This document shows, piece by piece, positions 15,403 through 34,709 of a DNA stretch of 64,000 bases (within the stretch, counting starts at the first letter, position 1; each line of letters begins with the position of its first letter). The stretch covers positions 310,001-374,000 of the IMG/VR virus record IMGVR_UViG_3300032782_000001; one strand, 5' to 3'. The translations under genes and the position numbers were made by a program. Under the pieces are notes generated by a model. It ran no database searches, was not told the DNA's origin, and saw only the letters and a list, made by a program, of their open reading frames with translations.

Positions 15403-16107
15403 TTAGACCATGGAAAGCAAGGCTGAACCAATCTCTGCGGCTACAGCTCGAGCTGCGGCTACAGGATTGGCCGCGTCACGAATAGGACGACCAACAACGA
15501 TGAGATCAGCGCCAGCTCGGATAGCAGCAGCAGGCGTAGAAATGCGTTTTTGGTCCCCCGAATCAGAACCCGATGGCCGAATGCCAGGGACCACGATAAA
15601 TGCTTCCGGGCCCAACAACTGGCGAAGAACTGATACTTCAAGAGGAGAACACACGAATCCACGAACCCCACAATCCCAAGCCATTTTGGCAAGACCTGAA
15701 ACCTGATCTTTTACAGGGCGACTAATCCCGGTAACACGGAGGTCTTCATCATTCATTGAAGTCAATACCGTGACCGCCAGAATTTTGGCATTCGCTCCAG
15801 TTGCAGACACAGCCCGTCGCAACATCTCGGGACCACCTGAAGCATGAACTGTCAAATACTTCACTCCATGCTTCATGGCTGATTTCACAGCCCTTTCTAC
15901 GGTCTCTGGTATATCGTGAAGCTTCAAATCCAAGAAAACATCCAAATTTAGATCTCGTCCGATTCGGAGAATGCCTGGCCCAGCAGCCACAAAGAGTTCG
16001 AGACCGATCTTCAAGACACCGATTTCATCTGCGAGCTTCTCTGCGAGAGAGCCCGCCTCGTCAATGGTGGAAACGTCGAGCGGGAGGACGATTCGGCTCT
16101 TAGCCAT
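15403..16107 (-). CDS. pyrF: Orotidine-5'-phosphate decarboxylase
   Basis: FLDLKLHDIPETV, LTVHASGG, VTVLTS, PGIRP, DQKR, VVGRPI. Start placed at ATG 16107 (MAKSRIVLPLD), 5 nt after TATCAT. Confidence 0.95.
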   Translation of the reverse strand: MAKSRIVLPLDVSTIDEAGSLAEKLADEIGVLKIGLELFVAAGPGILRIGRDLNLDVFLDLKLHDIPETVERAVKSAMKHGVKYLTVHASGGPEMLRRAVSATGANAKILAVTVLTSMNDEDLRVTGISRPVKDQVSGLAKMAWDCGVRGFVCSPLEVSVLRQLLGPEAFIVVPGIRPSGSDSGDQKRISTPAAAIRAGADLIVVGRPIRDAANPVAAARAVAAEIGSALLSMV

Positions 16108-16142
16108 TTCTGATGATACAACGAAGTTATCCAAGCGTATCT

Positions 16143-19487: not shown

Positions 19488-21803
19488 TCAGATTTCGATC
19501 TTCTTTTCCTTTTGCTCCACCTTGCCTTCAATGGACTGACCATCGTCCATGTCCACGAGCAAAGTGTTCTCGTCCAAACTCTTGAACTCGGTGAACCAGA
19601 CCTGACCGACGATGACGGAGAAGATCTGCTTAGCCTTCTCTGCAATCATTCCACGACGTTGCCTGTCTGCGGCCTTCTGGATGGGACGGAGCCAATCTTC
19701 GAACGCTTTGGTTTGATCTGATGCTTTTTTGTAAGCGTCAGACGCCATGAAATTGTCCACTTCAAGGATGGCGCGCCCCATGAGAACCGTCGGTCCATTC
19801 GGTTTGCCCTTCGCGAGCTTCTCTTTGGCTTCCTTGAGGCTCGGAAGACTTGAGAAGCCCTTGAGGCTCACAGTCATCTGCTTCGCCATATAGAAATCGC
19901 GTGCGTCTGCTTGAACGCTCTTCGGACCGAATCCGGAGTAGTCGGTGAACCCCTGTTCCTTCAGCCAATCAGCAGCCTCTTGTCCGTACTGCTCGATAAA
20001 GCCAGCACTCTTCTTCGTTCCAACCAGATCCTTAAGGACCGAGTTGTAAACCTTCTGCGAAGCTTGAACCTTCGTGAGCTCCCATTCGTTCTGGAATAGG
20101 ACTTTGGCAGAGACCGCTTTGACCATTTGCCGGTTGATGACAGGAAGGGACCTGAAGCTGATCAGGGTCACGTCCCCATCGGACTTGATAACGTCATCCC
20201 CAACCAGCCCTTGTTTGTGGATAGCAAAGAGCTTCTCCAACGTGGCTGCCGCCAATTTCACGGGCACAGTATCTACGTTTACCAGACCATCCTTGATGAC
20301 GGCGTAGTTGCGGTAAACGAAAGTCGGGAATTTCGCCGGGAGTTTGGCTTTGAGACCATCCGGGAGACGGCCGCTGATATCCACAGTTCCAGTCCTCTTG
20401 ACCTGAATACTGACGTTCGGGAACTCCTCGTTAAAGACGAGATTTGAAATAGAATATCCATCCGGTGCAGGTTCTGCTTCGAATTTCAAAGGAGCAGGCT
20501 TGTTTGAGATAGAAGCGATTCGCGCAGAGATATCTGCGACCTTCTTGGCATCCTTCGTCTTCTTCATCTCATCGGCGAGCTTATCTACTTCTGCTTGTTC
20601 TTCAGCAGTCAATACCGTCGAGGAATCTACTCGAGCCCGGGAGATCCGATCGTATTTGAAACTGGGATGATCCAGGAGAACTCGATTCTCTTCGTTCTCC
20701 GAGAGAAGGTTGAGCATGTCAAGAACCGTGAAGGCATCGTCACGCGGAATTTTCTTTGGATCGTATCCCTTAGTCAACCGTTGCTTCTCGTCAAAGACAG
20801 CGGCTTTAGCCAAGTCCATGAATTCTGAGTATTTCTGCTTGCCGAAGAGTCCACCAAATTTCTCGATGAACGCAACATCCCCCGTGAGTTTCAAGAAGGG
20901 GAGAACAACATCCGGCTTCATGCGAATGGAGAAGAGAGAAATGGCTGCATATGCTGCACCCACTTCATAAGCGTCCGTCTTCTTTCCAACGAGAGCAGGA
21001 GAGAGGTAGTAAACCACGTTAGCATTCTCAGGAACAGAAACCTTTCCGTCTGTGAGTCCGAAAGTAATGAGGTCTCCACCGTCTTCCATCCAAGCGAAAC
21101 CACCGATCGGATCACCCGTCACTGAGACTTCAATGCGCTTCCCTCCAAGTTGCTGCTTTTGCATCGCAGCTTCGAACAAGGGCGCATATTTATCAAAATT
21201 TTCAGAGAAGATGAGGGTGCCGCCTGCCTTCTCTGCCATGGAAGTGAGCAAGGGCCTGTCGGCATAGTAGCCGTATTCAACGAAGGTGGCCGAAGAAAGG
21301 CCACCAGCGGCCTTCTCGACTGCTTTGAGAATATCAGGACGTGGCCACTGATTGTCGCAACCATCGGACATGAAGAACAGGGCAAAACAGCTCCCAGGAC
21401 GCTTCTTCGATACTCGTTCTACGAGCTTGGAAGCCTCTTCTAAAGGCTCCTTGAATCCGGTAAGACAAACCGGTTTGAGCCACCTGTCGATTGCAGAATT
21501 GACTTCCTTGAGGTCTGCAAGCGTGGAAACGGGCTCCGCTTCGAGCAAAGTGCCGAATTGACCCTTGCCACTGAACCACACGATAGAGATCGTGTCCTTT
21601 TCCTTCAGGAGCTTAGGAAGCTTTTTCTTGAGCTGTTCCCTGATTTGGGGGAGCTCATACGACATGCTTCCAGAACAATCGATTACAGCAATGTGATTGA
21701 CCGGCACCTCGGCGGGCTTTGCTGGGGTAGCCTTATTGAGCTCCTGCCGAACGAGGTAAAGAGAATCCGAAACTTTGAAAGAAGTCTGCATGCCGGTCTC
21801 CAT
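19488..21803 (-). CDS. Large vWA-domain protein
   Basis: MIDAS DCSGS plus FFMSDG; 771 aa; divergent from the TROVE-like operon. Confidence 0.85.
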   Translation of the reverse strand: METGMQTSFKVSDSLYLVRQELNKATPAKPAEVPVNHIAVIDCSGSMSYELPQIREQLKKKLPKLLKEKDTISIVWFSGKGQFGTLLEAEPVSTLADLKEVNSAIDRWLKPVCLTGFKEPLEEASKLVERVSKKRPGSCFALFFMSDGCDNQWPRPDILKAVEKAAGGLSSATFVEYGYYADRPLLTSMAEKAGGTLIFSENFDKYAPLFEAAMQKQQLGGKRIEVSVTGDPIGGFAWMEDGGDLITFGLTDGKVSVPENANVVYYLSPALVGKKTDAYEVGAAYAAISLFSIRMKPDVVLPFLKLTGDVAFIEKFGGLFGKQKYSEFMDLAKAAVFDEKQRLTKGYDPKKIPRDDAFTVLDMLNLLSENEENRVLLDHPSFKYDRISRARVDSSTVLTAEEQAEVDKLADEMKKTKDAKKVADISARIASISNKPAPLKFEAEPAPDGYSISNLVFNEEFPNVSIQVKRTGTVDISGRLPDGLKAKLPAKFPTFVYRNYAVIKDGLVNVDTVPVKLAAATLEKLFAIHKQGLVGDDVIKSDGDVTLISFRSLPVINRQMVKAVSAKVLFQNEWELTKVQASQKVYNSVLKDLVGTKKSAGFIEQYGQEAADWLKEQGFTDYSGFGPKSVQADARDFYMAKQMTVSLKGFSSLPSLKEAKEKLAKGKPNGPTVLMGRAILEVDNFMASDAYKKASDQTKAFEDWLRPIQKAADRQRRGMIAEKAKQIFSVIVGQVWFTEFKSLDENTLLVDMDDGQSIEGKVEQKEKKIEI

Positions 21804-22130: not shown

Positions 22131-23996
22131 ATGCAGAAGGAAAATCTCGGACCTGCTGAGAGGATCATCAACACCATCCTGGCCTATTCGGATCACATGG
22201 TCCATAACCGGCCTGGAGTCGTTTCCCCGGACCCGACGTCGGCGACTGGTGTGAAGTGGGTGTTCGTGACCCACAAGACGGAAGACGGAAAGAAGGTCGT
22301 CTACGCCTTGGACAAGGTTGGCAAGAAGACCATCCGTCGAAAGCTCGGCGTCATGGGCGAGGACCGAAAGGTTCGTGATGACGCCAATCGCGTCATCGGT
22401 GAATATCGAGATGCCGGCATCTTTCCCGAGGTCGCAACTTGGCTTTACGGCCAAGTTGCGGAGGTGTGGAAGATCGATCATGAGTTCGCGGCTCGATGGG
22501 CCAGCTACCAATACGCCCAGGAGCATCGCGACATGAAGGCCGTTCTGGCTGCGTTCATGCTCGTGCAGTCCCGAAAGGGCGATCCTGTGATCGACGATGG
22601 CAAGGTAGCCTTCTACGACGAAGACTTCCGTGACGTCGGCGAGGCTATGATGCTCAGGTACAAGAAGGGCGACAAGCATGGGCTGCGTCCGAAGGACTTG
22701 CTTCGTATTCGGGACGTTCTCATGGTCCCGGGCGTGGCGGACATCAATCGCAAGCTCGGGTTCGGAAAGTCGGCCCGCAAGCCGTTCCTCGGCCGCTGGG
22801 AGAAGGCGGTCGAGAAGTGGTTGAAATTCCGGGAAGTCAATCCGAAAATGTTGGAAGGGCTCATCAAGGAGGGCTACAAGTCCACCGTCATGCAGCTCGC
22901 CCAGCTCATCGGTTACAAGCCGGAGTCGGATAAATTCTTCCATGCGCTTGGGTGGAAGCAGGTTCAGGCTAAGGATGGCCGTCGGGGTCTCGCGATTGGT
23001 CAGGTCCAGAGCGGCACGGACTCATGGGAAGGTATGTCCGAAGCCGAGGTCTGTGAAAAGATCGTGAAGGAAAAGACCGGCTTCAAGCGTCTCATCGGCC
23101 TCGTTCCGAAGGAGGTCGGCATGACTCGCGCCGTGATTGCGGCGGCGATCGAAGCTGGATCCTTGTCCGACAAGGACTTGGTCATCATGTCCGCCACGCT
23201 CGAAGAGCTTGGATTGCTCCAGGACCCGGATGTCCGTAAGCGTTGGGAGAAGGCTCTCAAGGCTGCTGAAGACATGCGGGCCGCAAACATTGCTTCGAGG
23301 GTCAAGTCTAAGGACGTCCAAGAGAAGCTCCAGGAAGCGGCTGACACGGCTGTTCAAAAGGCTGTCGAAGAGGTCAGCAGGGACATGCGTGTCTACTTCA
23401 TGGTCGACATCTCGGGGTCCATGGAAGGTGCAATCGAGGCGGCCAAGGATCACGTGGCGAAATTCCTTCAGGCATTCCCCGAAGACAAGATCCACGTATC
23501 CGTCTTCAACACTATCGGTCGAGAAGTGAAGGTCAAGCACCGTTCGGCTGCGGGAGTGAAGAACGCCTTTGAGGGTATTAGGGCGGAAGGTGGAACTTCA
23601 TATGCAGCAGGCGTAAGGGCCCTCCAAGGCCATAAGCCGCTTGCAAACGAAGATGTTTTGTTCATTTTCATTGGAGATGAGCAAGATAACACCGAACTCG
23701 CGGGTACCATCAGGGCTTCGGGTCTGAACCCCATGGCTTTCGGACTCGTGCCGGTCTTCGCGAAGCATTACGGACGCGGAAACCGCGTGACGACGGCAGC
23801 GTCAGAGCTCAAGATCCCGTGCTTCGAGATCGATGAAAAGACCTTCGCTGACCCGTACGCTATCCCGCGTGCAATCCGGGCTCTCATCGCGGCCACCCCC
23901 GTGAACCGTAGTCCGGAAAAGATCGTTCAGCGTGTCTCGCTCGTAGAGAACATCCTTAAAACGGATCTGATTACGAAGCCGGAGTGGGCTGCCTGA
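22131..23996 (+). CDS. TROVE/Ro60-like helical-repeat protein with C-terminal vWA domain
   Basis: Helical Lys-rich N-terminal region (EFAARWASY..RDMKAVLAAFML; VMQLAQLIGYKP), then vWA MIDAS DISGS, GGTS and IGDEQ. This is the Ro60 architecture. GGAG RBS before ATG 22131. vWA call strong, TROVE call moderate. Confidence 0.65.
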   Translation: MQKENLGPAERIINTILAYSDHMVHNRPGVVSPDPTSATGVKWVFVTHKTEDGKKVVYALDKVGKKTIRRKLGVMGEDRKVRDDANRVIGEYRDAGIFPEVATWLYGQVAEVWKIDHEFAARWASYQYAQEHRDMKAVLAAFMLVQSRKGDPVIDDGKVAFYDEDFRDVGEAMMLRYKKGDKHGLRPKDLLRIRDVLMVPGVADINRKLGFGKSARKPFLGRWEKAVEKWLKFREVNPKMLEGLIKEGYKSTVMQLAQLIGYKPESDKFFHALGWKQVQAKDGRRGLAIGQVQSGTDSWEGMSEAEVCEKIVKEKTGFKRLIGLVPKEVGMTRAVIAAAIEAGSLSDKDLVIMSATLEELGLLQDPDVRKRWEKALKAAEDMRAANIASRVKSKDVQEKLQEAADTAVQKAVEEVSRDMRVYFMVDISGSMEGAIEAAKDHVAKFLQAFPEDKIHVSVFNTIGREVKVKHRSAAGVKNAFEGIRAEGGTSYAAGVRALQGHKPLANEDVLFIFIGDEQDNTELAGTIRASGLNPMAFGLVPVFAKHYGRGNRVTTAASELKIPCFEIDEKTFADPYAIPRAIRALIAATPVNRSPEKIVQRVSLVENILKTDLITKPEWAA

Positions 23997-24176
23997 GTGG
24001 CGTACAAGACGCTGTACGCCGAGGTCAATAAGATCGAATTTCCGGAAGCTTTGGAAGCAGCCATGGAGTTGGACTCCAGGCTCCGGAAATTCGATCCATT
24101 AGACCCGGAAACTCTAAGATCGGCGTTAGTGACGCTGGCCCGGAGAGTCAAAGAACTCGAACACGAGTGGAGTTGA
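23997..24176 (+). CDS. Small hypothetical protein (59 aa)
   Basis: Below the track cutoff. GTG immediately after the upstream stop; MAYKTLYAEVNKIEF...ELEHEWS*; fills the operon gap exactly. Confidence 0.6.
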   Translation: MAYKTLYAEVNKIEFPEALEAAMELDSRLRKFDPLDPETLRSALVTLARRVKELEHEWS

Positions 24177-24177
24177 G

Positions 24178-24471
24178 ATGGGGTGGGCCTCAGGCCACAT
24201 CCAAAAGCTGATTGCGGGTGAAACCGTGCATTTCCGACCCCACGGCAATTCCATGTTGCCGAGGATCAAGTCGGGTCAACTTTGCACGGTTTCACCCGTA
24301 AGTCTGGATGACGTTAAAGTAGGTGACGTCATCCTTTGCAAGGTGCACGGACGCGAATTTCTTCACCTTGTCTCGGCAATCCGTGGTGGTCAATTGCAAA
24401 TCTCGAACAATCACGGGCACATCAACGGGTGGATTGGGCCAAAGTCGGTCTACGGGAAACTGGTGGAATAA
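24178..24471 (+). CDS. S24/S26 peptidase-like small protein
   Basis: GNSMLPRIKSGQ...GDVILCKV..FLHLV. Confidence 0.7.
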   Translation: MGWASGHIQKLIAGETVHFRPHGNSMLPRIKSGQLCTVSPVSLDDVKVGDVILCKVHGREFLHLVSAIRGGQLQISNNHGHINGWIGPKSVYGKLVE

Positions 24472-25493
24472 TGGGCTGGCGGAACCTTCTGCAAGAAAAG
24501 GAAGAACTCATCGTTCTGCCGTGGCTTGGGGGTCGAACGCTCAGGTCCGGTCCACGTGCGTGGCATTTGGACGGGAAGCTCCCTGCTGAACATGGTTGGT
24601 ACACTTTCAAACTCATGGGACGGAAAGCTATCCTCGGTGATTCCTACGACGAGGAATTGGCGAAGGAGCCGTGCGTACAGCCTCCAGGTTCCTTAATGTG
24701 TGAAGTGACTGGCTATCTTGTCGGTGACCGGCTCATCCTAGATAATGCCAATGTGGATCCGGATCCTTCGAAAATTGCGGAACAGTCGGAGACTGTGCAT
24801 CTCATCGAAGATGGACTGGATAGATTCGCTCGTATCGAAGCTGGGCGAGCGTGTGAAGACGGCCCACTCATCTACAGCGGAATGGTGATGCCGTTAGGGC
24901 CTGAGGAGGAAGTCCTCCAAGCATTTCTCGAACAAAAGTCATCTGTAGCAAACATCAAGGGCGTAGTTCCTGCACTGGACGCTGCCTTCCGTATGGAAGT
25001 TTGGCAGCGAATTGAAGCTGCCAAACGACGTGCAGAACTTGAGAGGATTCGCAAAGAAGAGGAAGAGAAGAGGCGTATTGAGGAGAAACGCCGGGAAATT
25101 GTCGAGAAGCTCGGCGACGGAGCTGGTCGAAGGGCAATGGCTGCCATCGATTTCGATGAAGCTGCCAGGGCTGCATTTGTTGTTGGAAATGCTCAGTTCC
25201 TGGATAGTCGGAAGAGCGCTCAAAAAGGCGAGATGGTCGTCCGCTTCCGTCTCGATAATCGTAGATTCGAATGCACCTGTGACAAGTTGACACTTAGAGT
25301 TATTGATGCGGGCATCTGTCTAGTTGATCACCGGACGCACGAGAAGGGTGATGGTTATTTCACGCTCGAAAGTTTACCTGGGGTTATTAGGCAAGCCCAG
25401 CGTGAGGGTAAACTCGTAGTCTTCCGTCGCGTGGACGGAGAAAACTATCCAAGGGGAGGAAATGATGATGACGATGAAGATTACGACGATTGA
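24471..25493 (+). CDS. Coiled-coil protein with putative divergent E2-like C-terminal domain
   Basis: Start ATG overlaps the upstream TAA. DAGICL recalls the E2 active-site GxICL; lies next to the JAB, Ubl and E1 genes. Confidence 0.45.
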   Translation: MGWRNLLQEKEELIVLPWLGGRTLRSGPRAWHLDGKLPAEHGWYTFKLMGRKAILGDSYDEELAKEPCVQPPGSLMCEVTGYLVGDRLILDNANVDPDPSKIAEQSETVHLIEDGLDRFARIEAGRACEDGPLIYSGMVMPLGPEEEVLQAFLEQKSSVANIKGVVPALDAAFRMEVWQRIEAAKRRAELERIRKEEEEKRRIEEKRREIVEKLGDGAGRRAMAAIDFDEAARAAFVVGNAQFLDSRKSAQKGEMVVRFRLDNRRFECTCDKLTLRVIDAGICLVDHRTHEKGDGYFTLESLPGVIRQAQREGKLVVFRRVDGENYPRGGNDDDDEDYDD

Positions 25494-25502
25494 GGTAACA
25501 TC

Positions 25503-26057
25503 ATGAGCATGGAAGCAGGAGTCGTCGTAGGAAAAGACGGTAAGGCAATTCATTGGCATCTTCCGGAAGAGAGGACCGGCGGATCTCTGCCCGATTCTCA
25601 GGCTCTCTGGGATTTCATCTGGAAGAATCGAAATGAAATTATGGGGATCGCCCACAGTCATCCTGGACGGGGACTTCCGGGGCCATCACACACGGATGTA
25701 ACCACTTTTGCCGCCATTGAGGATGGTCTCGGGAAGAGGCTCCTTTGGTGGATTACAAGCGAAGACAAACTTGTAGTCATCAAATGGGTAGGTCCTGGAA
25801 AGCACACTTATTCATCCAGGGAGATCTCGAGTAATGACCCCGAATGGTTAAAGCCACTCCGAAACGCATCTCACGAACTTTCAGAAGCTCGACTCGAAGA
25901 AGTTTGCCAGTATGTAACGGAGACTCACCGGGAAGCTGCTCGACGGGTGTCTGCAGGAAAAGCGGCGCTCGAGGACATGGTAGTGTCAGTCCTCAACGGG
26001 CTCCCCCATGCCGATCCAGATGAGATTCGGAAGAAGATCCTGGATTCGGTGAAATAA
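25503..26057 (+). CDS. JAB/MPN+ metallopeptidase
   Basis: N-terminal Glu (MEAG) and HSHP...PSHTD JAMM motif. Confidence 0.85.
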   Translation: MSMEAGVVVGKDGKAIHWHLPEERTGGSLPDSQALWDFIWKNRNEIMGIAHSHPGRGLPGPSHTDVTTFAAIEDGLGKRLLWWITSEDKLVVIKWVGPGKHTYSSREISSNDPEWLKPLRNASHELSEARLEEVCQYVTETHREAARRVSAGKAALEDMVVSVLNGLPHADPDEIRKKILDSVK

Positions 26058-26102
26058 ATCCAAAACTTGGGAACGTAAGTTCCTCTTCTAAGGAGAATCG
26101 AA

Positions 26103-26372
26103 ATGAACGAAATGGTAATCGAGGCAGGACAGGCGAGGGTCAACATCACGTGGCAGGGTCAGAACGGGGACATGCCTGGCGCTGTCCATTACGACTCGAC
26201 GGACGGCGACGTCCGACAGTGGGTCACGGAGGCCGTTCGCACGGGTGGGGTGCCTGGTATTCGTGCTGACGCCGCCGCGAATTTCACGGACTTCGTCGTG
26301 GAGAGGTTCCCGTCGACGCAGGATAGGCCCTTCAACCTGATCCAGGTCAGGCCGAAGACGCCGTTCGGTTGA
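26103..26372 (+). CDS. Ubiquitin-like small protein (putative)
   Basis: 89 aa; strong AAGGAG RBS; ends LIQVRPKTPFG with a terminal Gly; between JAB and E1. Confidence 0.65.
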   Translation: MNEMVIEAGQARVNITWQGQNGDMPGAVHYDSTDGDVRQWVTEAVRTGGVPGIRADAAANFTDFVVERFPSTQDRPFNLIQVRPKTPFG

Positions 26373-26800
26373 TGGAGAAGAATTCGGAAGAAGAAGCCTG
26401 GAAACAGGCTGTCGACCTCTGGAAAAAACTCGCCCAGATCCGAGGCGTGGCGTACTCCGCCATGTTCGCAGTCAGGGGTGAGATGATAGAAGAAGAAAAA
26501 GCGGAACTCCTTGAGGACCTCGAAAAAGTCCTCAAGGAGACTGCTGTTGACTTCCCCAATGGGGTGGATTGGAACGCTCACGAAAACGGTGAGTTCAAGC
26601 TTCTTCCTAAGAAGATAGAGGATTACATGGAAGCCAAGATCAAGACAACTGGATTCAAAGTGGAAATTCAGTTGAACGAATATGAGGCAGATTCCATTCG
26701 TCGGGCCGTAATCGGCCGTGATGATCGGGAAGCTCAGAAGCTTATGCAACAACTTTCCGAGACCGTTTGGAAGGCTGTGGTTAACGCTGTAAACAAGTGA
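26372..26800 (+). CDS. Hypothetical helical protein
   Basis: TGATG coupling with the Ubl gene; overlaps the E1 start. Confidence 0.6.
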   Translation: MEKNSEEEAWKQAVDLWKKLAQIRGVAYSAMFAVRGEMIEEEKAELLEDLEKVLKETAVDFPNGVDWNAHENGEFKLLPKKIEDYMEAKIKTTGFKVEIQLNEYEADSIRRAVIGRDDREAQKLMQQLSETVWKAVVNAVNK

Positions 26801-27381
26801 TCTCCATGAAGAACATCACCATCGTGGGAGTAGGAGCACTCGGATCGCATTTCGTGCAATTCGCGCGCGGGTTCCCGGCTGCTCTCAAGATTATTGACTT
26901 TGATCGAGTGGAACAGAAGAACGTCGCGTCACAGTTCCACGCGAAGACCTCGGTCGGCAAAGGAAAGGTCCTCGGTCTCCAACAGACCGTCCAGCTCCTC
27001 TGGGGTATGAAGCTTACCACAGTGCCTCATAAGTTGACTTCCGAAAATGAAGCACAAATTCTCGGTGGGGCCGATCTCATCGTAGATTGCCTCGACAATG
27101 GGGCAGCACGACGCATCGTCCAGGGATTTGTTCGAAAGAATACTATCCCGTGCGTTCACGGGGCCTTGGCCGCAGACGCCGCCTTCGGGCGGGTCGTATG
27201 GGACGAGTCATTCGCAATTGACGATGAGCCGGGAGAAGGTGCGCCTACCTGCGAAGACGGCGTTCATCTCCCTTTCATCGCCCTCGCCTCGTCTTTACTC
27301 GCTCGCGCAGTACAGGTCTTCATCACGGACGGGAAGAAGATCGGATACCAAATCAGACCAAACGGCGTCGTCCAAACGTGA
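26797..27381 (+). CDS. ThiF/E1-like adenylating enzyme
   Basis: VGVGALGS, IDFDRVEQKN, GKV, DLIVDCLDN..ARR; candidate catalytic Cys in APTCEDG. Confidence 0.9.
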   Translation: MISMKNITIVGVGALGSHFVQFARGFPAALKIIDFDRVEQKNVASQFHAKTSVGKGKVLGLQQTVQLLWGMKLTTVPHKLTSENEAQILGGADLIVDCLDNGAARRIVQGFVRKNTIPCVHGALAADAAFGRVVWDESFAIDDEPGEGAPTCEDGVHLPFIALASSLLARAVQVFITDGKKIGYQIRPNGVVQT

Positions 27382-27384
27382 GTC

Positions 27385-27413
27385 TTGACAGAGACACTCG
27401 TCGAGTGTATTCT
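27385..27413 (+). promoter_or_regulatory. Sigma70-type promoter for the ncRNA array, with a palindromic spacer
   Basis: TTGACA-17 nt-TATTCT; ACACTCG-T-CGAGTGT spans the spacer and the -10 edge. Confidence 0.85.
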
Positions 27414-27430
27414 GGTGGAAAGCACAAATC

Positions 27431-27509
27431 CAGAGAGCACGTCCAACAAGCGGAACTCACAAGCTAGGATACAGCCAAAACCAGTTTCGCCACTCGGGCG
27501 CGCTCTCTG
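27431..27509 (+). ncRNA. Y-RNA-like unit 1 (minimal module)
   Basis: Closing stem CAGAGAGCACGTCC/GGGCGCGCTCTCTG; inner stem GCGGAACT/AGTTTCGC; ACAAGC and ACC motifs. Confidence 0.7.
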
Positions 27510-27515
27510 AATTCT

Positions 27516-27644
27516 GCCGGACATGAGGACTGGCGTCCTCGATTCCCCCATACGGAATTTTCCCGGTACCGCTCCTCGGTCCTGAAAGGGACCACCTAAC
27601 GGTTCCTACAAGCAAGGAAGGTTCGATTCCTTCGTCCGGCTCCA
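27516..27644 (+). tRNA. Atypical tRNA(CAT)-like RNA with a 57-nt variable-arm insert (unit 2)
   Basis: Acceptor GCCGGAC/GTCCGGC + T-CCA; D arm GAGGAC-TGGC-GTCCTC; anticodon arm GATTCC-CCCATAC-GGAATT; T arm GAAGG-TTCGATT-CCTTC. Confidence 0.75.
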
Positions 27645-27764
27645 GAGCGTCCAGTTAGCGGTGCTTACAAGCAAGATGCTCCTAGGTGGAGCGTCGGATT
27701 CTGCATCCGAAGGGGCGGCTTCGAAAACCGCTCTTGCACAACCAGCATCGGCCCTCGGACGCTC
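27645..27764 (+). ncRNA. YrlA-like RNA, module plus tRNA-mimic domain (unit 3)
   Basis: GAGCGTCC/GGACGCTC; CGGTGCT/AGCATCG; GCAAGA/TCTTGC closes D-like, anticodon-like and TTCGA-containing T-like hairpins. Confidence 0.75.
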
Positions 27765-27778
27765 GTAGTCTCGTAGTT

Positions 27779-27811
27779 TTTGACCCGACCAAGATTCTTG
27801 GTCGGGTCAAA
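27779..27811. terminator. Perfect 16-bp inverted repeat between convergent units (bidirectional terminator)
   Basis: TTTGACCCGACCAAGA-T-TCTTGGTCGGGTCAAA. Confidence 0.8.
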
Positions 27812-30776: not shown

Positions 30777-31400
30777 ATGCACGATTTGCGAGACGTCTTC
30801 ATCCATGATCCGATTCGACATGCTGGGATTTATGATGCAAATCCCGGAGACAACTGGTGGATCATGATGGATAAAGGAGAACCAAAAAGGGTAACCATCG
30901 GTTCTCAACCAAAGCCCGCGACCACAGAAGACGGTGAAATGACACTCGCGTTCCACGCTAACATTCGGATTCCATATTTCGAAATCGTGGACGAGGTTGA
31001 AATTCAAAAGAAGTTAGCAGAACTTCTGGTGCACGCGGCAGAAAAGCGTGGATGTTCAAAAGCCGTCAGTATCTTCCAAGTCCTGGAGAAACTTAGGGAA
31101 GGACTTGGAAACAAGCCTCTTCGGCATGTCTTGGCATCCAGGAAAACCTTCTTGGCAAAAATCCGAGATCCTTACGAGGAGGCACTTGGACCCAACATTA
31201 GAGCGCCTAAGAAATGGGCACAATTCTTCTACGAACTGAAAGGAACCAAGCCAGTTTGGAATGAATCACTGCCCGAAGGGATGTTTATTGGCACCACCAA
31301 TCAAGAAGAAGTGGGATGGGTGACGTGCTCGGGCGGCTGGTTTACCCCTGTAGGAGCTGCTGTGAATGAATCAGGAGTCTTTGGAGTCCACCTGAGTTAG
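30777..31400 (+). CDS. Hypothetical protein, possible truncated capsid-protein paralog
   Basis: C-terminal half aligns by eye with the C-terminal half of the capsid protein. Confidence 0.5.
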   Translation: MHDLRDVFIHDPIRHAGIYDANPGDNWWIMMDKGEPKRVTIGSQPKPATTEDGEMTLAFHANIRIPYFEIVDEVEIQKKLAELLVHAAEKRGCSKAVSIFQVLEKLREGLGNKPLRHVLASRKTFLAKIRDPYEEALGPNIRAPKKWAQFFYELKGTKPVWNESLPEGMFIGTTNQEEVGWVTCSGGWFTPVGAAVNESGVFGVHLS

Positions 31401-32086
31401 ACTCGGCCCATTTTGGCAGCGTAGGCCTGAATCAAGGTCAGGTAATCTCGATTCGGAGCCCCTGCGGGAGTCTGGCTGCTGGTGAACGAAATTGCTTCGT
31501 TCACATTCATGCCGTGGGCTCGTATCATGTAGCAAGCCACGACTGCTCCAGTCCTGTCTGCCCCAAGAGAACAATGGACATAAATAGCTCGAGCAGGGTC
31601 ATGAAGAAGTTCCGTAATCCGGTCCACCAAACCACACAGGTCCCAACCGGGAGACGTGAGAAAGACATGAGGATCTTGACCTTGACCTACCCCTTCAATA
31701 GGCCACCACATGAAATTGGCAGTCCTAGAAGAAGAAGAGGTACGGATTACACAAGGATGTAATTCCTCGGCATCGTAATCTGGTTGTAGGTATGGAGGCC
31801 AATACGATGGTCCCCATAAATCTGGAAGTCCAAGAGAAGACAATTCCGCCTTTAGCATAGGATGTTCACCCGTGCTGTCAATAAGGGACACTATAGTCAT
31901 AGTTGTCCCTGCGAGCTTAGAATCAATCCTATCCGCGATACCGGAATAGGCGAAAGTCCCATCTCCGAGCATCGGGAATGGTCCGCGAATGAACAAACTA
32001 CTGTTAAAACTATCCACTAGTGCTACACGAGATGGATCAAAAACTCTCACATTCAAATTGTTGGAAAAAACTTTTACGAATGACAC
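31397..32086 (-). CDS. Dual-specificity/tyrosine phosphatase
   Basis: HCSLGADRTG (CX5R motif). Confidence 0.85.
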   Translation of the reverse strand: MSFVKVFSNNLNVRVFDPSRVALVDSFNSSLFIRGPFPMLGDGTFAYSGIADRIDSKLAGTTMTIVSLIDSTGEHPMLKAELSSLGLPDLWGPSYWPPYLQPDYDAEELHPCVIRTSSSSRTANFMWWPIEGVGQGQDPHVFLTSPGWDLCGLVDRITELLHDPARAIYVHCSLGADRTGAVVACYMIRAHGMNVNEAISFTSSQTPAGAPNRDYLTLIQAYAAKMGRV

Positions 32087-32553: not shown

Positions 32554-33357
32554 TCATATTAAAATGTGTTCTTCTGACGTCGGACTGCCATAGTATTTAG
32601 CTTTATTAACTCGACATTCAATGTTTCTGGACACGCGAATCCAGCATCGAGTGTGAGTGTGGCCGGCAAGAACGACGACGTGTCGTTTATTCCTACCGTT
32701 CATGACTCGTTCGATCATGCGACCCATTGTCACATTCGTGTTGTATGGAAGCCAGAATTTCTCCATTAAAGTCCCCACTGCCCTAGTAGCCTCTACCCAA
32801 GGTGGGAAATGGGTAAGAACGTATATTGTTTTGAAATTCTCTAGTGCGGAAGTAAGTGAGGCTTCGAGAAGGTCCGCGGACGCCTGAGCGAGGGATCGGA
32901 AAGCATCAACTCTGGCTTCCATACCGGATAAAGTTAGAAAATCATAGGTTTGGAACCAGTCAGTCGTATATCGGAGCCAAGATGGATCTCCCCGCCGGGC
33001 GTCGTACCAACCCTCAGTACCTATGAGAGCTACTTCTTCGTTCAGAGAAACAACGCCAGACTCCGTCATCCAATGCAAATTAGGATATGTAGCCGAAAGC
33101 CTTCGTATATCTCCGTGGACGCTCGCGAGCGTCCTTCCGTGATAATCATGATTCCCCAAAACGAAATAAATCGGGCACGACAAGGAAGCCGCGAACTTAC
33201 CAAGACAATTCTCTAAATGAGAACCGTTACTTATATCCCCCGTCAAGAAAATTCCAGAGGGGCTTTCCACTCGTAAGTGACGCACGAGATTTCGAGTCGC
33301 CCACGGAAGAGCGAAATTTAAATGCGTATCCGTGAGCCACACGTACTTCTGGCGCAC
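32554..33357 (-). CDS. Calcineurin-like metallophosphoesterase
   Basis: DTH, GDIS, GNHD, THFPP, GHTH. Confidence 0.9.
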   Translation of the reverse strand: MRQKYVWLTDTHLNFALPWATRNLVRHLRVESPSGIFLTGDISNGSHLENCLGKFAASLSCPIYFVLGNHDYHGRTLASVHGDIRRLSATYPNLHWMTESGVVSLNEEVALIGTEGWYDARRGDPSWLRYTTDWFQTYDFLTLSGMEARVDAFRSLAQASADLLEASLTSALENFKTIYVLTHFPPWVEATRAVGTLMEKFWLPYNTNVTMGRMIERVMNGRNKRHVVVLAGHTHTRCWIRVSRNIECRVNKAKYYGSPTSEEHILI

Positions 33358-34043: not shown

Positions 34044-34709
34044 TCATACGTTCGGAATAGCCCAGTCAATAGGCTTAGACCCCATACGAATAAGTGCTTC
34101 GTTTGCTTTCGAAAAAGGTTTGGATCCAAAAAAGCCGGCTGCCGCCGACATAGGACTCGGATGAGCCGCCGACACGATTGCATGCCTCCCAACATCAATG
34201 AGGAAACATTTGGATTTAGCAGGCTTCCCCCAAAGGAGGAATACAATAGGCTCTTCCCGCGCGGAAAGCTTTCGAATAACCTCGTCCGTAAATTCTTCCC
34301 AACCTTGTCCCTGATGAGATCCCGGATTCCCAGCCCGAACCGTGAGGGTCGTGTTGAGTAAAAAAACTCCTTGCTTCACCCAAGAATCAAGACAGCCATG
34401 ATTCGGCGGCTTGATACCGAGGTCTGATTCAAGCTCCTTGTAAATGTTCCTGAGGCTCGGAGGAATGGGGACACCCGAACGCACTGAAAAACATAGTCCA
34501 TGAGCTTGGCCGGGCCCATGGTAAGGATCCTGACCCAGGATGACCACCTTCACGTCGTCAAAGGGAGTTCCAAACGCATTGAAGACGTCCTCGTGAGGTG
34601 GATAAACCGTCTCCTTCTCTCGTTCCTTCTGGGTGAAAGCTTCTAGTCTCTTGAAATAATGCTTGGAGAACTCCGAGCGAAGGAACGGCTTCCAGGACTC
34701 ATGGATCAT
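34044..34709 (-). CDS. ung: Uracil-DNA glycosylase, family 1
   Basis: GQDPYH, GLCFS, PPSLRNI, LLNTTLTV, HPSPMS. Confidence 0.96.
   Translation of the reverse strand: MIHESWKPFLRSEFSKHYFKRLEAFTQKEREKETVYPPHEDVFNAFGTPFDDVKVVILGQDPYHGPGQAHGLCFSVRSGVPIPPSLRNIYKELESDLGIKPPNHGCLDSWVKQGVFLLNTTLTVRAGNPGSHQGQGWEEFTDEVIRKLSAREEPIVFLLWGKPAKSKCFLIDVGRHAIVSAAHPSPMSAAAGFFGSKPFSKANEALIRMGSKPIDWAIPNV

What the first reader, a model, noticed from the sequence alone, without database searches (positions are those of the whole stretch)
22131..27811. Phage locus coupling a Ro60/TROVE-like protein, a ubiquitin-like conjugation set and a Y-RNA-like array
Seen: a tightly packed plus-strand operon of TROVE-like-vWA, a 59-aa ORF, S24-like, a coiled-coil protein with DAGICL, JAB (HSHP..S..D), an 89-aa protein ending in Gly, a helical ORF and ThiF/E1. 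It is followed by a consensus promoter and three structured RNAs. Known: E1+E2+Ubl+JAB form bacterial Ub-like systems, and Ro60 binds Y RNAs usually encoded nearby. Inference: one machine in which a Ro60-RNA particle scaffolds or selects targets for Ubl conjugation, for example in tRNA/ribosome damage response or counter-defence. I do not know this combination as a characterised phage system.
Basis: partly seen in the sequence, partly recalled or inferred. Interest (0 to 1): 0.92.

Follow-up and report, generated by a model that had tools for sequence, protein, structure and literature searches.

The report
Phage Ro-like, ubiquitin-like, tRNA-like RNA module
Huge phages that probably infect Myxococcota carry a deeply conserved cassette joining a Ro60-like vWA protein, a minimal ubiquitin-like activation set and an array of new tRNA-like RNAs, a combination with no characterised counterpart.

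Summary
All eight plus-strand genes, the promoter and three structured RNAs are at the stated coordinates.

- **Conserved core:** five genes keep one order and strand in about 140 loci: helical-repeat+vWA protein, Cys protein, JAMM protease, Ubl ending in Gly, and a 190-aa ThiF-type E1. The 59-aa, S24-like and 143-aa ORFs are variable inserts.
- **RNAs:** these are new covarying families. They share a two-helix "handle" with invariant CUCG and ACA(A/C)GC, joined to a tRNA-like body in three topologies. One topology, found in relatives, is YrlA-like (permuted). The arrays lie just after E1 or just before the vWA gene, even at 29-42% protein identity.
- **Ro60 likeness:** it rests on Foldseek top hits, language-model features and the RNA neighbours. 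Pfam, HMMER and hhalign do not detect TROVE.
- **E2:** no UBC fold was found. The evidence is an invariant Cys (GxCL) in an alpha-beta4-Cys-alpha domain.

Best reading (about 0.42): a Ro-type RNP coupled to Ubl conjugation. Rivals are sulfur-carrier chemistry, plain neighbourhood, and tRNA maturation. Function is untested.

The parts
22131..23996 (+). Ro60-like protein, 621 aa: N-terminal beta domain (about residues 29-93), helical repeats (about 99-416) and a C-terminal vWA domain with an intact MIDAS site
   Evidence: VWA_2 E 3e-9. AF2 model pLDDT 82. Foldseek top hits are 9kop, 9l5y, 1yvr, 1yvp and 2i91, all Ro60/TROVE. Atlas features point to TROVE/DUF2828 at 0.87. MIDAS residues are invariant. 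More than 1,700 homologues, mostly on 100-600 kb contigs. No sequence-level TROVE signal.
23997..24176 (+). 59-aa ORF, accessory insert
   Evidence: No family hit. Absent from all other loci.
24178..24471 (+). 97-aa mini S24/S26-like ORF with a GNSMLP Ser motif, accessory insert
   Evidence: Peptidase_S24 E 1e-3, below cut-off. Signal peptidase I E 2.5e-5. Found elsewhere only in L057, at another position.
24471..25493 (+). It has an N-terminal beta-rich region, a long charged helix and a C-terminal alpha-beta4-Cys283-alpha domain. An acidic tail is present in some members.
   Evidence: Invariant G281, C283 and L284 and near-invariant C268 in 54 homologues. AF2 model pLDDT 88. No UBC or any other significant fold or sequence match. 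Acidic tail in 13 of 54.
25503..26057 (+). JAMM/MPN+ metalloprotease, 184 aa (about 125-135 aa in relatives)
   Evidence: Prok-JAB E 2e-5. E4, H51xH53, S62 and D65 are at least 95% conserved in 54 sequences.
26103..26372 (+). Ubl candidate, 89 aa, with C-terminal RPKTPFG. The Gly is terminal here and is followed by 1-7 variable residues in relatives.
   Evidence: Alignment of 46 homologues with G89 invariant. The atlas gives leads only, to Prok_Ub and TmoB beta-grasp families. No Pfam or PDB sequence hit.
26369..26800 (+). 143-aa helical ORF, accessory insert
   Evidence: No significant family. Not found in other loci.
26797..27381 (+). Minimal E1/ThiF-type adenylating enzyme, 191-194 aa
   Evidence: ThiF E 2e-22. 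ThiF, MoeB and UbaA models and Cap2 E1-E2 models match the adenylation domain. GxGxxG, DxD, N39, Q43, K54, DCxDN, R102 and C149 are conserved.
27385..27413 (+). Sigma-70-type promoter for the RNA array (TTGACA-17-TATTCT)
   Evidence: 10 of 12 consensus matches. A like site lies within -30..+400 of the E1 stop in 14 of 50 loci, against about 1.8 expected.
27432..27509 (+). RNA element 1: 'handle only', helices S1 and S2 with the CUCG and ACAAGC motifs and no tRNA-like body
   Evidence: Fold. Matches model R1 end to end in 78 nt, 46 bits, E 3e-8.
27512..27646 (+). RNA element 2 (type T2). It has a 7-bp acceptor stem, a D-like hairpin, an anticodon-like hairpin, the handle as a long arm in the variable position, a canonical T arm (GGTTCGATTCC) and a U-CCA end.
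   Evidence: Alignment and covariation. R2 gives 117.8 bits. In 100 distinct copies 95.9% of cells are paired, and the covariation score is 0.889 against 0.08-0.13 for slid controls.
27640..27770 (+). RNA element 3 (type T3): the handle (S1 9 bp, S2) enclosing a degenerate tRNA-like cloverleaf (27671-27738)
   Evidence: Rfam tRNA 30.8 bits in a local scan, while ARAGORN calls nothing. R1 gives 111.6 bits. In the 53-sequence alignment 26 of 27 pairs show compensatory changes.
27779..27811 (+). Terminator-like hairpin, 15-bp perfect stem
   Evidence: sequence.

Best explanation
The locus is one conserved functional cassette of huge phages whose host is probably Myxococcota. It has two coupled halves.

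**(1) A Ro-type ribonucleoprotein.**
- The 621-aa helical-repeat plus vWA(MIDAS) protein is inferred to bind a shared RNA 'handle'. The handle is helix S1, an internal loop with invariant CUCG, helix S2 and invariant ACA(A/C)GC.
- The handle is carried by an adjacent, separately promoted array of 80-150-nt RNAs.
- Each RNA presents a tRNA-like body (T arm, D-type loop, acceptor stem, often NCCA). The body could tether the particle to tRNA-recognising factors, as Y RNAs tether Ro60 to PNPase.

**(2) A minimal ubiquitin-like pathway.**
- The JAMM protease exposes or recycles the invariant C-terminal Gly of the 89-aa Ubl.
- The 190-aa ThiF-type E1 adenylates that Gly.
- The activated Ubl passes to a cysteine, either E1 C149 or C283 of the 340-aa Cys protein acting as an E2 analogue, and then to a lysine.
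- The target lysine would be on the RNP itself or on a protein captured by the RNP or by the vWA MIDAS site.

**Shown:** gene identities for E1, JAMM and vWA; the Ubl C-terminal signature; the RNA structures; the linkage of all parts.

**Inferred:** RNA binding by the vWA protein, thioester transfer, the identity of targets, and the biological role (tRNA or translation quality control, or counter-defence during infection).
For: **Linkage**
- The order TROVE-like, Cys protein, JAMM, Ubl, E1 holds in essentially every IMG/VR locus with enough sequence.
- It holds in 75 of 77 loci anchored on the Cys protein and in MAG contigs.
- It holds in the distant phage contig L067 with the Ubl moved upstream.
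- Meanwhile the intervening ORFs come and go.

**RNAs**
- Three covariance-model families (R1, R2, R3) give about 58, 100 and 50 full-length hits.
- They start 36-800 nt after the E1 stop in about 37 loci, or 72-1345 nt upstream of the vWA gene in 7.
- The linkage is kept at 29-42% protein identity in L142, L144 and L172.
- Only 8 of 922 ordinary array tRNAs carry both flank motifs.
- Covariation is strong.
- The tRNA-like bodies are not decoding-constrained. There are 22 anticodons among 38 called. A34 occurs in 14 of 38 against 34 of 897 ordinary tRNAs, Fisher 5e-10.
- The permuted type gives a sub-threshold Rfam YrlA match: 25 bits, E 0.0018 in a local scan.

**Protein**
- The six best Foldseek PDB hits are Ro60/TROVE. 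TROVE/DUF2828 features score 0.87. MIDAS is intact.

**Ubl set**
-, plus the invariant Cys.

**Precedent**
- Phage Ro60 with adjacent Y-like RNAs: PMC4201824, PMC12135203, PMC7824862.
Against: - No sequence method links the helical region to TROVE: Pfam, phmmer, hmmsearch, and hhalign at 0.3%.
- Foldseek TM-scores to Ro60 are only 0.2-0.3, with model pTM 0.50. The Atlas structure search found no TROVE cluster.
- The Y-RNA motif GNCGAAN0-1G on the 5' strand is absent. The conserved motifs differ, and CUCG lies on the 3' strand.
- No UBC fold, E3 or known Ubl family was detected.
- A few loci lack detectable RNAs: L001 has only T1p, and L013, L015, L020, L053 and L067 have none.
- No RNA-seq run was listed, so expression and RNA ends are unknown.
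- Conserved synteny among related phages can persist without mechanistic coupling.
Confidence: 0.42

Rival explanations
1. Sulfur-carrier pathway. The Ubl is thiocarboxylated by the ThiF-type E1, as with ThiS/MoaD, TtuB/TtuC, SAMP/UbaA and Urm1/Uba4. It donates sulfur for thiolation of tRNAs or of the tRNA-like RNAs, for example in the invariant T loop. The JAMM only matures the Ubl. The Cys protein relays persulfide. The vWA protein presents the RNA.
For: - The best E1 models are ThiF, MoeB and SAMP-E1, all below their cut-offs.
- The E1 is minimal, about 190 aa, with no E2 or E3 fold detected.
- Ubl+E1+JAMM triads also serve sulfur transfer, and Ubl systems link to tRNA thiolation (PMC3980101, PMC2948915, PMC1779556).
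- The cassette lies inside tRNA arrays.
- All RNA types keep a canonical T loop.
Against: - The C-terminus is PFG, not the GG typical of sulfur carriers.
- No rhodanese, cysteine desulfurase or PP-loop thiouridine synthetase is in the conserved module.
- The vWA MIDAS protein and the Cys protein have no counterpart in known sulfur relays.
Confidence: 0.15
2. Two independent neighbours. A Ro-like RNP (vWA protein plus RNAs) and a separate Ubl system sit side by side because this part of the genome is syntenic in one phage lineage. One example of a separate role would be modifying virion or host proteins, as with the lambda-type tail Ubl/JAB pair. There would be no joint mechanism.
For: - All loci come from one broad clade of huge phages.
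- Variable genes, up to several kb, are tolerated between the core genes.
- The JAMM weakly matches a PHROG annotated as tail protein, E 2e-4.
Against: - Co-occurrence is near-complete in both directions, 75 of 77.
- It survives to 29-38% identity and through gene-order change (L067, L142, L144).
- The RNAs bracket the whole five-gene block rather than the vWA gene alone.
- No structural genes are adjacent.
Confidence: 0.17
3. tRNA maturation or regulation device. The T3 and T2 elements are real or conditional tRNA precursors whose handle is a processing or storage signal. The vWA protein would be a pre-tRNA chaperone or gatekeeper, and the Ubl set would regulate it. On this reading the RNAs are substrates, not scaffolds.
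For: - 38 of 52 T3 cores are called tRNAs by ARAGORN.
- Some score 52-61 bits with Rfam tRNA.
- Many have a 7-bp acceptor stem and an encoded NCCA, 26 of 102 T2.
- The arrays are embedded in phage tRNA clusters.
- M. smegmatis YrlA is itself cut by RNase P and receives CCA (PMC4201824).
Against: - Anticodon identity is not conserved at orthologous sites, and A34 is tenfold enriched.
- The window's own T3 core is degenerate: no nucleotides 8-9, an aberrant T loop and no ARAGORN call.
- T1p has a closed acceptor hairpin, and T2 has a 55-nt arm and non-tRNA D and anticodon hairpins.
- Handle-only copies exist.
Confidence: 0.14

Closest known systems
Ro60/Rsr-Y RNA (YrlA) ribonucleoproteins, including phage versions (Mycobacterium phage Bxz1 gp220; Thermus phage phiLo phiRo60 with Yrl1/Yrl2)
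   Same: - A helical-repeat plus vWA(MIDAS) protein of about 550-620 aa is encoded next to one or more 80-150-nt RNAs.
- Those RNAs have a terminal stem, an internal loop and a tRNA-like domain.
- Relatives carry a permuted T-arm, acceptor hairpin, D-arm form like YrlA (PMC4201824, PMC12135203).
   Different: - There is no detectable TROVE sequence signature.
- An extra N-terminal beta domain is present.
- The RNA motifs are CUCG/ACAAGC, not GNCGAA.
- The handle leaves the body at the variable-arm or acceptor position, not the anticodon position.
- The RNAs come as arrays of 2-8 copies in three topologies.
- The unit is always joined to E1, Ubl, JAMM and Cys-protein genes. No RtcB or PNPase context is present.
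Bacterial ubiquitin-like conjugation operons (Bil, Bub, type II CBASS Cap2/Cap3; E1-E2-JAB-Ubl operons of Iyer et al. 2006)
   Same: - A ThiF-type E1, a JAMM protease and a small protein with an invariant C-terminal Gly that is sometimes masked by extra residues.
- A partner protein with an invariant Cys (PMC1779556, PMC10557695, PMC11601596).
   Different: - It is phage-encoded rather than a host defence system.
- The E1 is only about 190 aa.
- The Cys protein shows no UBC fold.
- Apart from weak matches of Cap2 E1-E2 models to the E1 domain, no PADLOC defence model fits.
- It is coupled to a vWA protein and to RNAs.
Ubl sulfur carriers tied to tRNA thiolation (TtuB/TtuC, SAMP2/UbaA/HvJAMM1, Urm1/Uba4)
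   Same: A Ubl, a MoeB/ThiF-like E1 and a JAMM protease, with a functional link to tRNA (PMC3980101, PMC2948915).
   Different: - The Ubl ends in a single Gly (PFG), not GG.
- No sulfurtransferase or PP-loop enzyme is in the module.
- The vWA and Cys proteins are additional.
vWA-MoxR ternary conflict systems that include a Ubl-conjugation set (Kaur et al. 2020)
   Same: A vWA protein is genetically coupled to E1, JAB and Ubl components (PMC7159879).
   Different: There is no MoxR or FtsH ATPase, no RING E3 and no effector domain. The vWA carries a Ro-like helical region, and RNAs are part of the unit.
Circularly permuted tRNA-like genes (two-piece/permuted tmRNA, permuted tRNAs)
   Same: In T1p the order is T arm, acceptor 3' strand with (A)CCA, loop, acceptor 5' strand, D arm. 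It gives a sub-threshold match to Rfam tmRNA_permuted, 31 bits.
   Different: There is no mRNA-like part and no pseudoknots. The RNA is 150 nt and has the extra conserved handle. The same lineage holds both permutations (T1p and T2).

Membership tests
Ro60/TROVE (Pfam PF05731 + vWA_Ro60 PF25045) | Sequence match to the TROVE domain model or to TROVE proteins | tested here: not met
   - No PF05731 hit in the window protein, in 42 homologues or in distant members.
- phmmer and hmmsearch against the PDB hit only vWA.
- hhalign against the Bxz1 gp220 family gives 32% for the whole protein and 0.3% for the helical part.
Ro60/TROVE | HEAT-repeat ring followed by a vWA domain with a MIDAS site | tested here: inconclusive
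   - AF2 gives helical repeats 99-416 plus vWA 419-590.
- The six best Foldseek PDB hits are all Ro60/TROVE over 508-556 columns, E 1e-8 to 6e-6, but TM is 0.2-0.3.
- Atlas features of residues 95-418 score TROVE/DUF2828 at 0.87, while the Atlas structure search found no TROVE.
- MIDAS is invariant.
- Ring closure could not be checked.
Ro60/TROVE | Encoded next to Y-type RNAs, and binds them | tested here: inconclusive
   Adjacency is met and conserved. Binding cannot be tested with these tools.
YrlA / bacterial Y RNA (Rfam RF02553) | Covariance-model match at or above the gathering score (69 bits) | tested here: not met
   The window gives no YrlA hit even at E <= 10. The relative L003 element scores 25 bits, E 0.0018, covering model positions 30-81 only.
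YrlA / bacterial Y RNA | Terminal stem from the 5'/3' ends plus a permuted tRNA-like domain (T arm, acceptor-like hairpin, D arm) | tested here: inconclusive
   Met in relatives: type T1p has about 50 copies and 37 pairs, 31 of them with compensatory change. The window itself holds only handle-only, T2 and T3 forms and has no R3 hit.
YrlA / bacterial Y RNA | GNCGAAN0-1G (CGAA) motif near the 5' end | tested here: not met
   The conserved motifs are CUCG, 5' of the S1 3' strand, and ACA(A/C)GC. Only some copies read CUCGAA.
Ubiquitin-like conjugation system (E1-E2-Ubl-DUB) | E1 adenylation domain with nucleotide-binding and catalytic residues | tested here: met
   ThiF E 2e-22. GxGxxG, DxD, DCxDN, R102 and C149 are conserved.
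Ubiquitin-like conjugation system | Beta-grasp Ubl with an exposed or processable C-terminal Gly | tested here: inconclusive
   The Gly is invariant, terminal or followed by 1-7 residues. There are only weak atlas leads to Prok_Ub/TmoB and no Pfam or PDB hit.
Ubiquitin-like conjugation system | JAMM/MPN+ isopeptidase with the E...HxH...S..D motif | tested here: met
Ubiquitin-like conjugation system | E2 with a UBC fold and a catalytic Cys | tested here: not met
   - The AF2 model (pLDDT 88) has no UBC hit in the PDB or BFVD, best E 0.16-0.2.
- There is no Pfam, PADLOC, PDB-profile or atlas hit.
- An invariant Cys283 exists in an alpha-beta4-Cys-alpha domain. An analogous role is therefore not excluded.
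ThiS/MoaD-type sulfur carrier pathway | C-terminal Gly-Gly and a linked sulfurtransferase or PP-loop enzyme | tested here: not met
   The C-terminus is PFG. No such enzyme is among the conserved genes.
tRNA (Rfam RF00005) | Cloverleaf accepted by tRNA finders, with an identity conserved among orthologues | tested here: not met
   The window core 27671-27738 scores 30.8 bits only in a local scan and gets no ARAGORN call. Across loci there are 22 anticodons in 38 called cores, and A34 is enriched.

The most novel reading that the evidence does not exclude
The E1-activated C-terminal Gly of the Ubl is not passed to a lysine. It is esterified to the 3' terminal ribose of the T2-type RNA (7-bp acceptor stem, canonical T arm, N-C-C/U-A/G end). 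This is an aminoacylation-like 'charging' of a tRNA-like RNA with a protein. It would happen on a platform formed by the Ro-like vWA protein bound to the handle. The Cys protein would be the transfer catalyst and the JAMM protease the eraser. That would be a protein-RNA conjugate system encoded by a phage.
Probability: 0.04. Interest if true: 0.97.

Novelty: new variant of a known kind. Interest (0 to 1): 0.8.

Why it matters
- Ro60-Y RNA particles and ubiquitin-like conjugation are each well studied, but they are not known to work as one genetic unit. If they are coupled, this cassette gives a compact, reconstitutable system for asking what a Ro-type RNP does and how RNA scaffolds could direct a protein modifier.
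- The work defines three new, strongly covarying RNA families. They show natural circular permutation of a tRNA-like RNA around one conserved protein-binding-type handle. This bears on how Y RNAs and tRNA mimics evolve.
- It adds a phage-encoded ubiquitin-like pathway to a field where such pathways are so far known as bacterial antiphage defences.
- It points to Myxococcota as hosts of a large clade of huge phages.

Tried and rejected
- **Rfam:** at gathering thresholds the 64-kb window gives nothing. ARAGORN finds no tRNA or tmRNA.
- **Megablast to GenBank phages:** nothing. tblastn finds only Virus Rctr197k and one weak vWA hit.
- **Sequence searches of the Cys protein and Ubl** against Pfam, PHROGs, PADLOC, NCBIfam and PDB sequences, as single sequences and as profiles: nothing meaningful.
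- **Foldseek of the Cys-protein model** against the PDB and BFVD: no hit below E 0.1. The weak DsbC_N, SH2 and dsRBD resemblances were rejected as insignificant.
- **Atlas search of its C-terminal domain:** no useful lead.
- **Profile search of the helical region** against 1.84 billion representatives: an isolated family of 201 hits, with no TROVE among the distant members checked.
- **hhalign against true TROVE proteins:** not significant.
- **Idea that the stems are a general flank of all array tRNAs:** rejected. Only 8 of 922 have both motifs, and leader-trailer duplex energies equal mismatched controls.
- **Idea that the 59-aa, S24-like and 143-aa ORFs belong to the machine:** rejected for lack of conservation.
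- **Expression data:** only two DNA runs hold the sequence, and no RNA run was listed.
- **Neighbouring window genes:** transglycosylase, OMP decarboxylase, DSP phosphatase, metallophosphoesterase and UDG give no RNA-repair context.
- **Supplement of the jumbo-phage survey:** not held.

Full report
**Source and observation.** The window is positions 300001-364000 of IMG/VR contig UViG_3300032782_000001, 436,316 bp, from a wetland metagenome.

The starts at 22131 and 24471 are confirmed by the N-termini of homologues.
- Firm domain assignments:
  - ThiF for 26797-27381, E 2e-22.
  - A vWA domain at residues 421-500 of the first protein, E 3e-9.
  - A JAB domain for 25503-26057, E 2e-5.
  - Sources.
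- The S24 call is weak.
- A TTGACA-17-TATTCT site follows the E1 stop, and a 15-bp hairpin closes the unit.
- The 417 nt between them fold far better than shuffles, z = -8.7.
- Rfam at gathering scores and ARAGORN report nothing in the whole window.

**What is conserved.** The first protein has more than 1,700 relatives, nearly all unnamed and many on contigs of 100-620 kb.
- In 65 IMG/VR loci plus GenBank Virus Rctr197k, five genes keep the same order and strand at 40-69% identity. They are the vWA protein, the Cys protein, JAMM, Ubl and E1. Unrelated ORFs of 0-6 kb are inserted between them.
- The 59-aa, S24-like and 143-aa ORFs of the window are such inserts.
- Anchoring the search on the Cys protein instead returns 77 loci, and 75 have the vWA protein within 8 kb upstream. 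These include variants at 29-38% identity.
- The distant AT-rich contig L067 has the order Ubl (89 aa...TTAGI), vWA protein (557 aa), a 292-aa protein with CREAGFCIS and an acidic tail, JAB, ThiF.
- The five genes are therefore a unit, not a chance neighbourhood.

**The enzymes.**
- JAMM keeps E4, H51xH53, S62 and D65.
- E1 keeps GxGxxG, DxD, N39/Q43, K54, DCxDN, R102 and a conserved C149.
- The 89-aa protein has an invariant C-terminal Gly in RPKTPFG. The Gly is terminal in some phages and followed by 1-7 variable residues in others. This is the pattern of a modifier matured by a protease.
There are only weak leads to Prok_Ub/TmoB beta-grasp families.
- The 340-aa protein has an invariant G281-x-C283-L284 and a near-invariant C268.
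  - A confident model (pLDDT 88) shows a beta-rich N-terminal part, a long charged helix and a C-terminal alpha-beta4-Cys-alpha domain.
  - This topology is compatible with a minimal E2.
  - No UBC or other fold was recovered from the PDB, BFVD, the Atlas or any profile library.
  - It should be called a conserved Cys protein and E2 candidate, not an E2.

**Is the first protein Ro60-like?**
- *For:*
  - The AlphaFold model (pLDDT 82, pTM 0.50) has helical repeats 99-416 followed by a vWA domain.
  - The six best of 350,542 PDB chains are all Ro60/TROVE structures: phiLo 9kop and 9l5y, and Xenopus 1yvr and 1yvp. A further Ro60 entry, 2i91, ranks eighth.
  - They align over 508-556 columns at E 1e-8 to 6e-6 (1.3e-5 for 2i91). 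Plain vWA hits start at E 1.3e-5.
  - Language-model features of residues 95-418 alone point to TROVE and DUF2828 clusters, score 0.87, a lead.
  - The MIDAS residues are invariant.
- *Against:*
  - TM-scores are 0.2-0.3.
  - The Atlas structure search found no TROVE cluster.
  - Pfam, phmmer and hmmsearch see only vWA.
  - A profile of the helical part finds an isolated family of 201 representatives without TROVE.
  - hhalign against a true TROVE alignment built from Bxz1 gp220 relatives gives 32% for the whole protein and 0.3% for the helical part.
- *Verdict:* the protein has a Ro60-like architecture. Homology is unproven.

**The RNAs.** Aligning the window RNAs with regions downstream of E1 in relatives shows one shared handle. 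It consists of helix S1, an asymmetric internal loop with invariant CUCG next to the S1 3' strand, helix S2, and invariant ACA(A/C)GC after the S2 5' strand. The handle is joined to a tRNA-like body in three ways.
- *Type T3* (window 27640-27770).
  - The handle prolongs the acceptor stem of a normal-order cloverleaf.
  - In 53 copies, 26 of 27 pairs have compensatory changes.
- *Type T2* (window 27512-27646).
  - It has a 7-bp acceptor stem, D-like and anticodon-like hairpins and a canonical T arm.
  - The handle is capped by a GNRA-like loop and sits in the variable-arm position.
  - In 100 distinct copies 95.9% of cells pair. The covariation score is 0.889 against 0.08-0.13 for slid controls.
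- *Type T1p* (relatives only).
  - The RNA ends lie in S1. The body runs T arm, closed acceptor hairpin (often with CCA in the loop), D arm, anticodon-like hairpin.
  - This is a circular permutation of T2 and is the YrlA plan.
  - It gives sub-threshold Rfam matches to YrlA (25 bits) and to permuted tmRNA (31 bits).
  - About 50 copies were found.
- *Window element 27432-27509* is the handle alone.

**Linkage of RNAs and genes.**
- Arrays of 2-8 back-to-back elements begin 36-800 nt after the E1 stop in about 37 loci. In 7 loci they lie 72-1345 nt upstream of the vWA gene.
- The linkage persists in MAG contigs and in the most divergent variants: L142, L144, and L172, where an RNA lies inside the gene block.
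- Ordinary tRNAs of the surrounding arrays lack the handle. Only 8 of 922 have both motifs, and they score 45 bits or less with R1, over the core only.
- The embedded cores are not conserved in identity. There are 22 anticodons in 38 called cores, and A34 occurs in 37% against 3.8% of ordinary tRNAs, Fisher 5e-10. The window's core is degenerate.
- A promoter-like site at the E1 stop recurs in 14 of 50 loci against about 1.8 expected.

**Mechanism.** The best-supported reading is a Ro-type RNP genetically coupled to a minimal Ubl pathway, as set out under Best explanation.
- *Shown:* the parts, their active-site conservation, the RNA structures and the linkage.
- *Inferred:* the vWA protein binds the handle, the tRNA-like bodies tether tRNA-recognising factors, the Ubl is passed through Cys to lysines, and the role in infection.
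- *Rivals:* a sulfur-carrier relay for RNA thiolation, mere synteny, and a tRNA-precursor device. None is excluded, and each has a stated refuting result.
- No RNA-seq run was listed, so expression is untested.

**Comparison with what is known.** Each of the following has been described:
- Phage Ro60 homologues with adjacent Y-like RNAs (PMC4201824, PMC12135203, PMC7824862).
- Bacterial Ubl operons (PMC1779556, PMC10557695, PMC11601596).
- vWA systems joined to Ubl sets (PMC7159879).

Three literature searches found no report of a Ro-like protein joined to E1/Ubl/JAMM, or of these RNA families. The locus fails the sequence and covariance-model tests for TROVE, YrlA and UBC. It is best filed as a new variant that works like these systems, not as a member of them.

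**Verdict.** Novelty is high, and the mechanism is open.

Noticed in passing
L146-L173 (genome contigs); L168 = NZ_JAOVZF010000163.1:118551-140368: Cellular-genome hits to the vWA protein are almost all on contigs binned into Myxococcota MAGs (Polyangia, Kofleriaceae, Sandaracinaceae, Sorangium). One is on a 799-kb scaffold of the isolate Paraliomyxa miuraensis SMH-27-4, which holds the full module. This is a host lead and a possible culturable source.
   Followed up: partly
window 1-64000 versus L003-L066: The window has no tRNA or tmRNA gene in 64 kb. In most relatives the module sits inside plus-strand arrays of 15-48 tRNA genes within 10 kb on either side. Some also have tmRNA (L036, L037, L040, L047).
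   Followed up: partly
window 19488-21803 (-): A 771-aa protein with an N-terminal vWA domain (PHROG 2426, E 5e-177) is divergently placed upstream. Homologues recur within 10 kb of the module in L011, L015, L020, L051 and L117 at varying positions and strands.
   Followed up: no
window 24178-24471 (+): A 97-aa ORF keeps the GNSMLP serine motif of S24/S26 peptidases in a much shortened protein. It occurs only in this phage, with a 50% relative elsewhere in L057.
   Followed up: no
E1 stop in L004, L006, L010, L019, L061; window 27385: The -35 box TTGAC overlaps the E1 stop codon (..TTGAC..) in several loci. The RNA promoter is therefore fused to the end of the coding block.
   Followed up: partly
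T3 cores in L003-L063 (list): The embedded tRNA-like cores often carry A at position 34 (anticodons AUC, AAC, AUU, AAA, AUG, AAU). These are rare in the ordinary phage tRNAs of the same loci.
   Followed up: yes
L001 = KX853510.1 (Virus Rctr197k) 184234-186183: In the only GenBank relative the vWA gene is annotated as a misc_feature ('similar to conserved hypothetical protein') rather than a CDS. It directly follows about 35 tRNA genes. The ThiF-like gene is annotated 7 kb downstream, and a T1p RNA lies at locus 19501-19684.
   Followed up: partly
window 25430-25493; A4 C-termini: The Cys protein ends in a run of Asp/Glu (GGNDDDDEDYDD) in 13 of 54 homologues and in the distant L067 version. 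This could be a ligand for the invariant MIDAS site of the vWA protein.
   Followed up: partly
window 15403-16134 (-), 11518-13551 (+), 31397-32086 (-), 32554-33357 (-), 34044-34709 (-): Neighbouring genes encode OMP decarboxylase, a transglycosylase-domain protein, a dual-specificity phosphatase, a calcineurin-like phosphoesterase and a UDG-family protein. None is conserved with the module.
   Followed up: no
L172 6835-6991; L144 5128-5268: In two divergent lineages a T1p RNA lies between the vWA gene and the Cys-protein gene, or immediately upstream of the vWA gene. The RNA position relative to the block is flexible, but it is always adjacent.
   Followed up: partly
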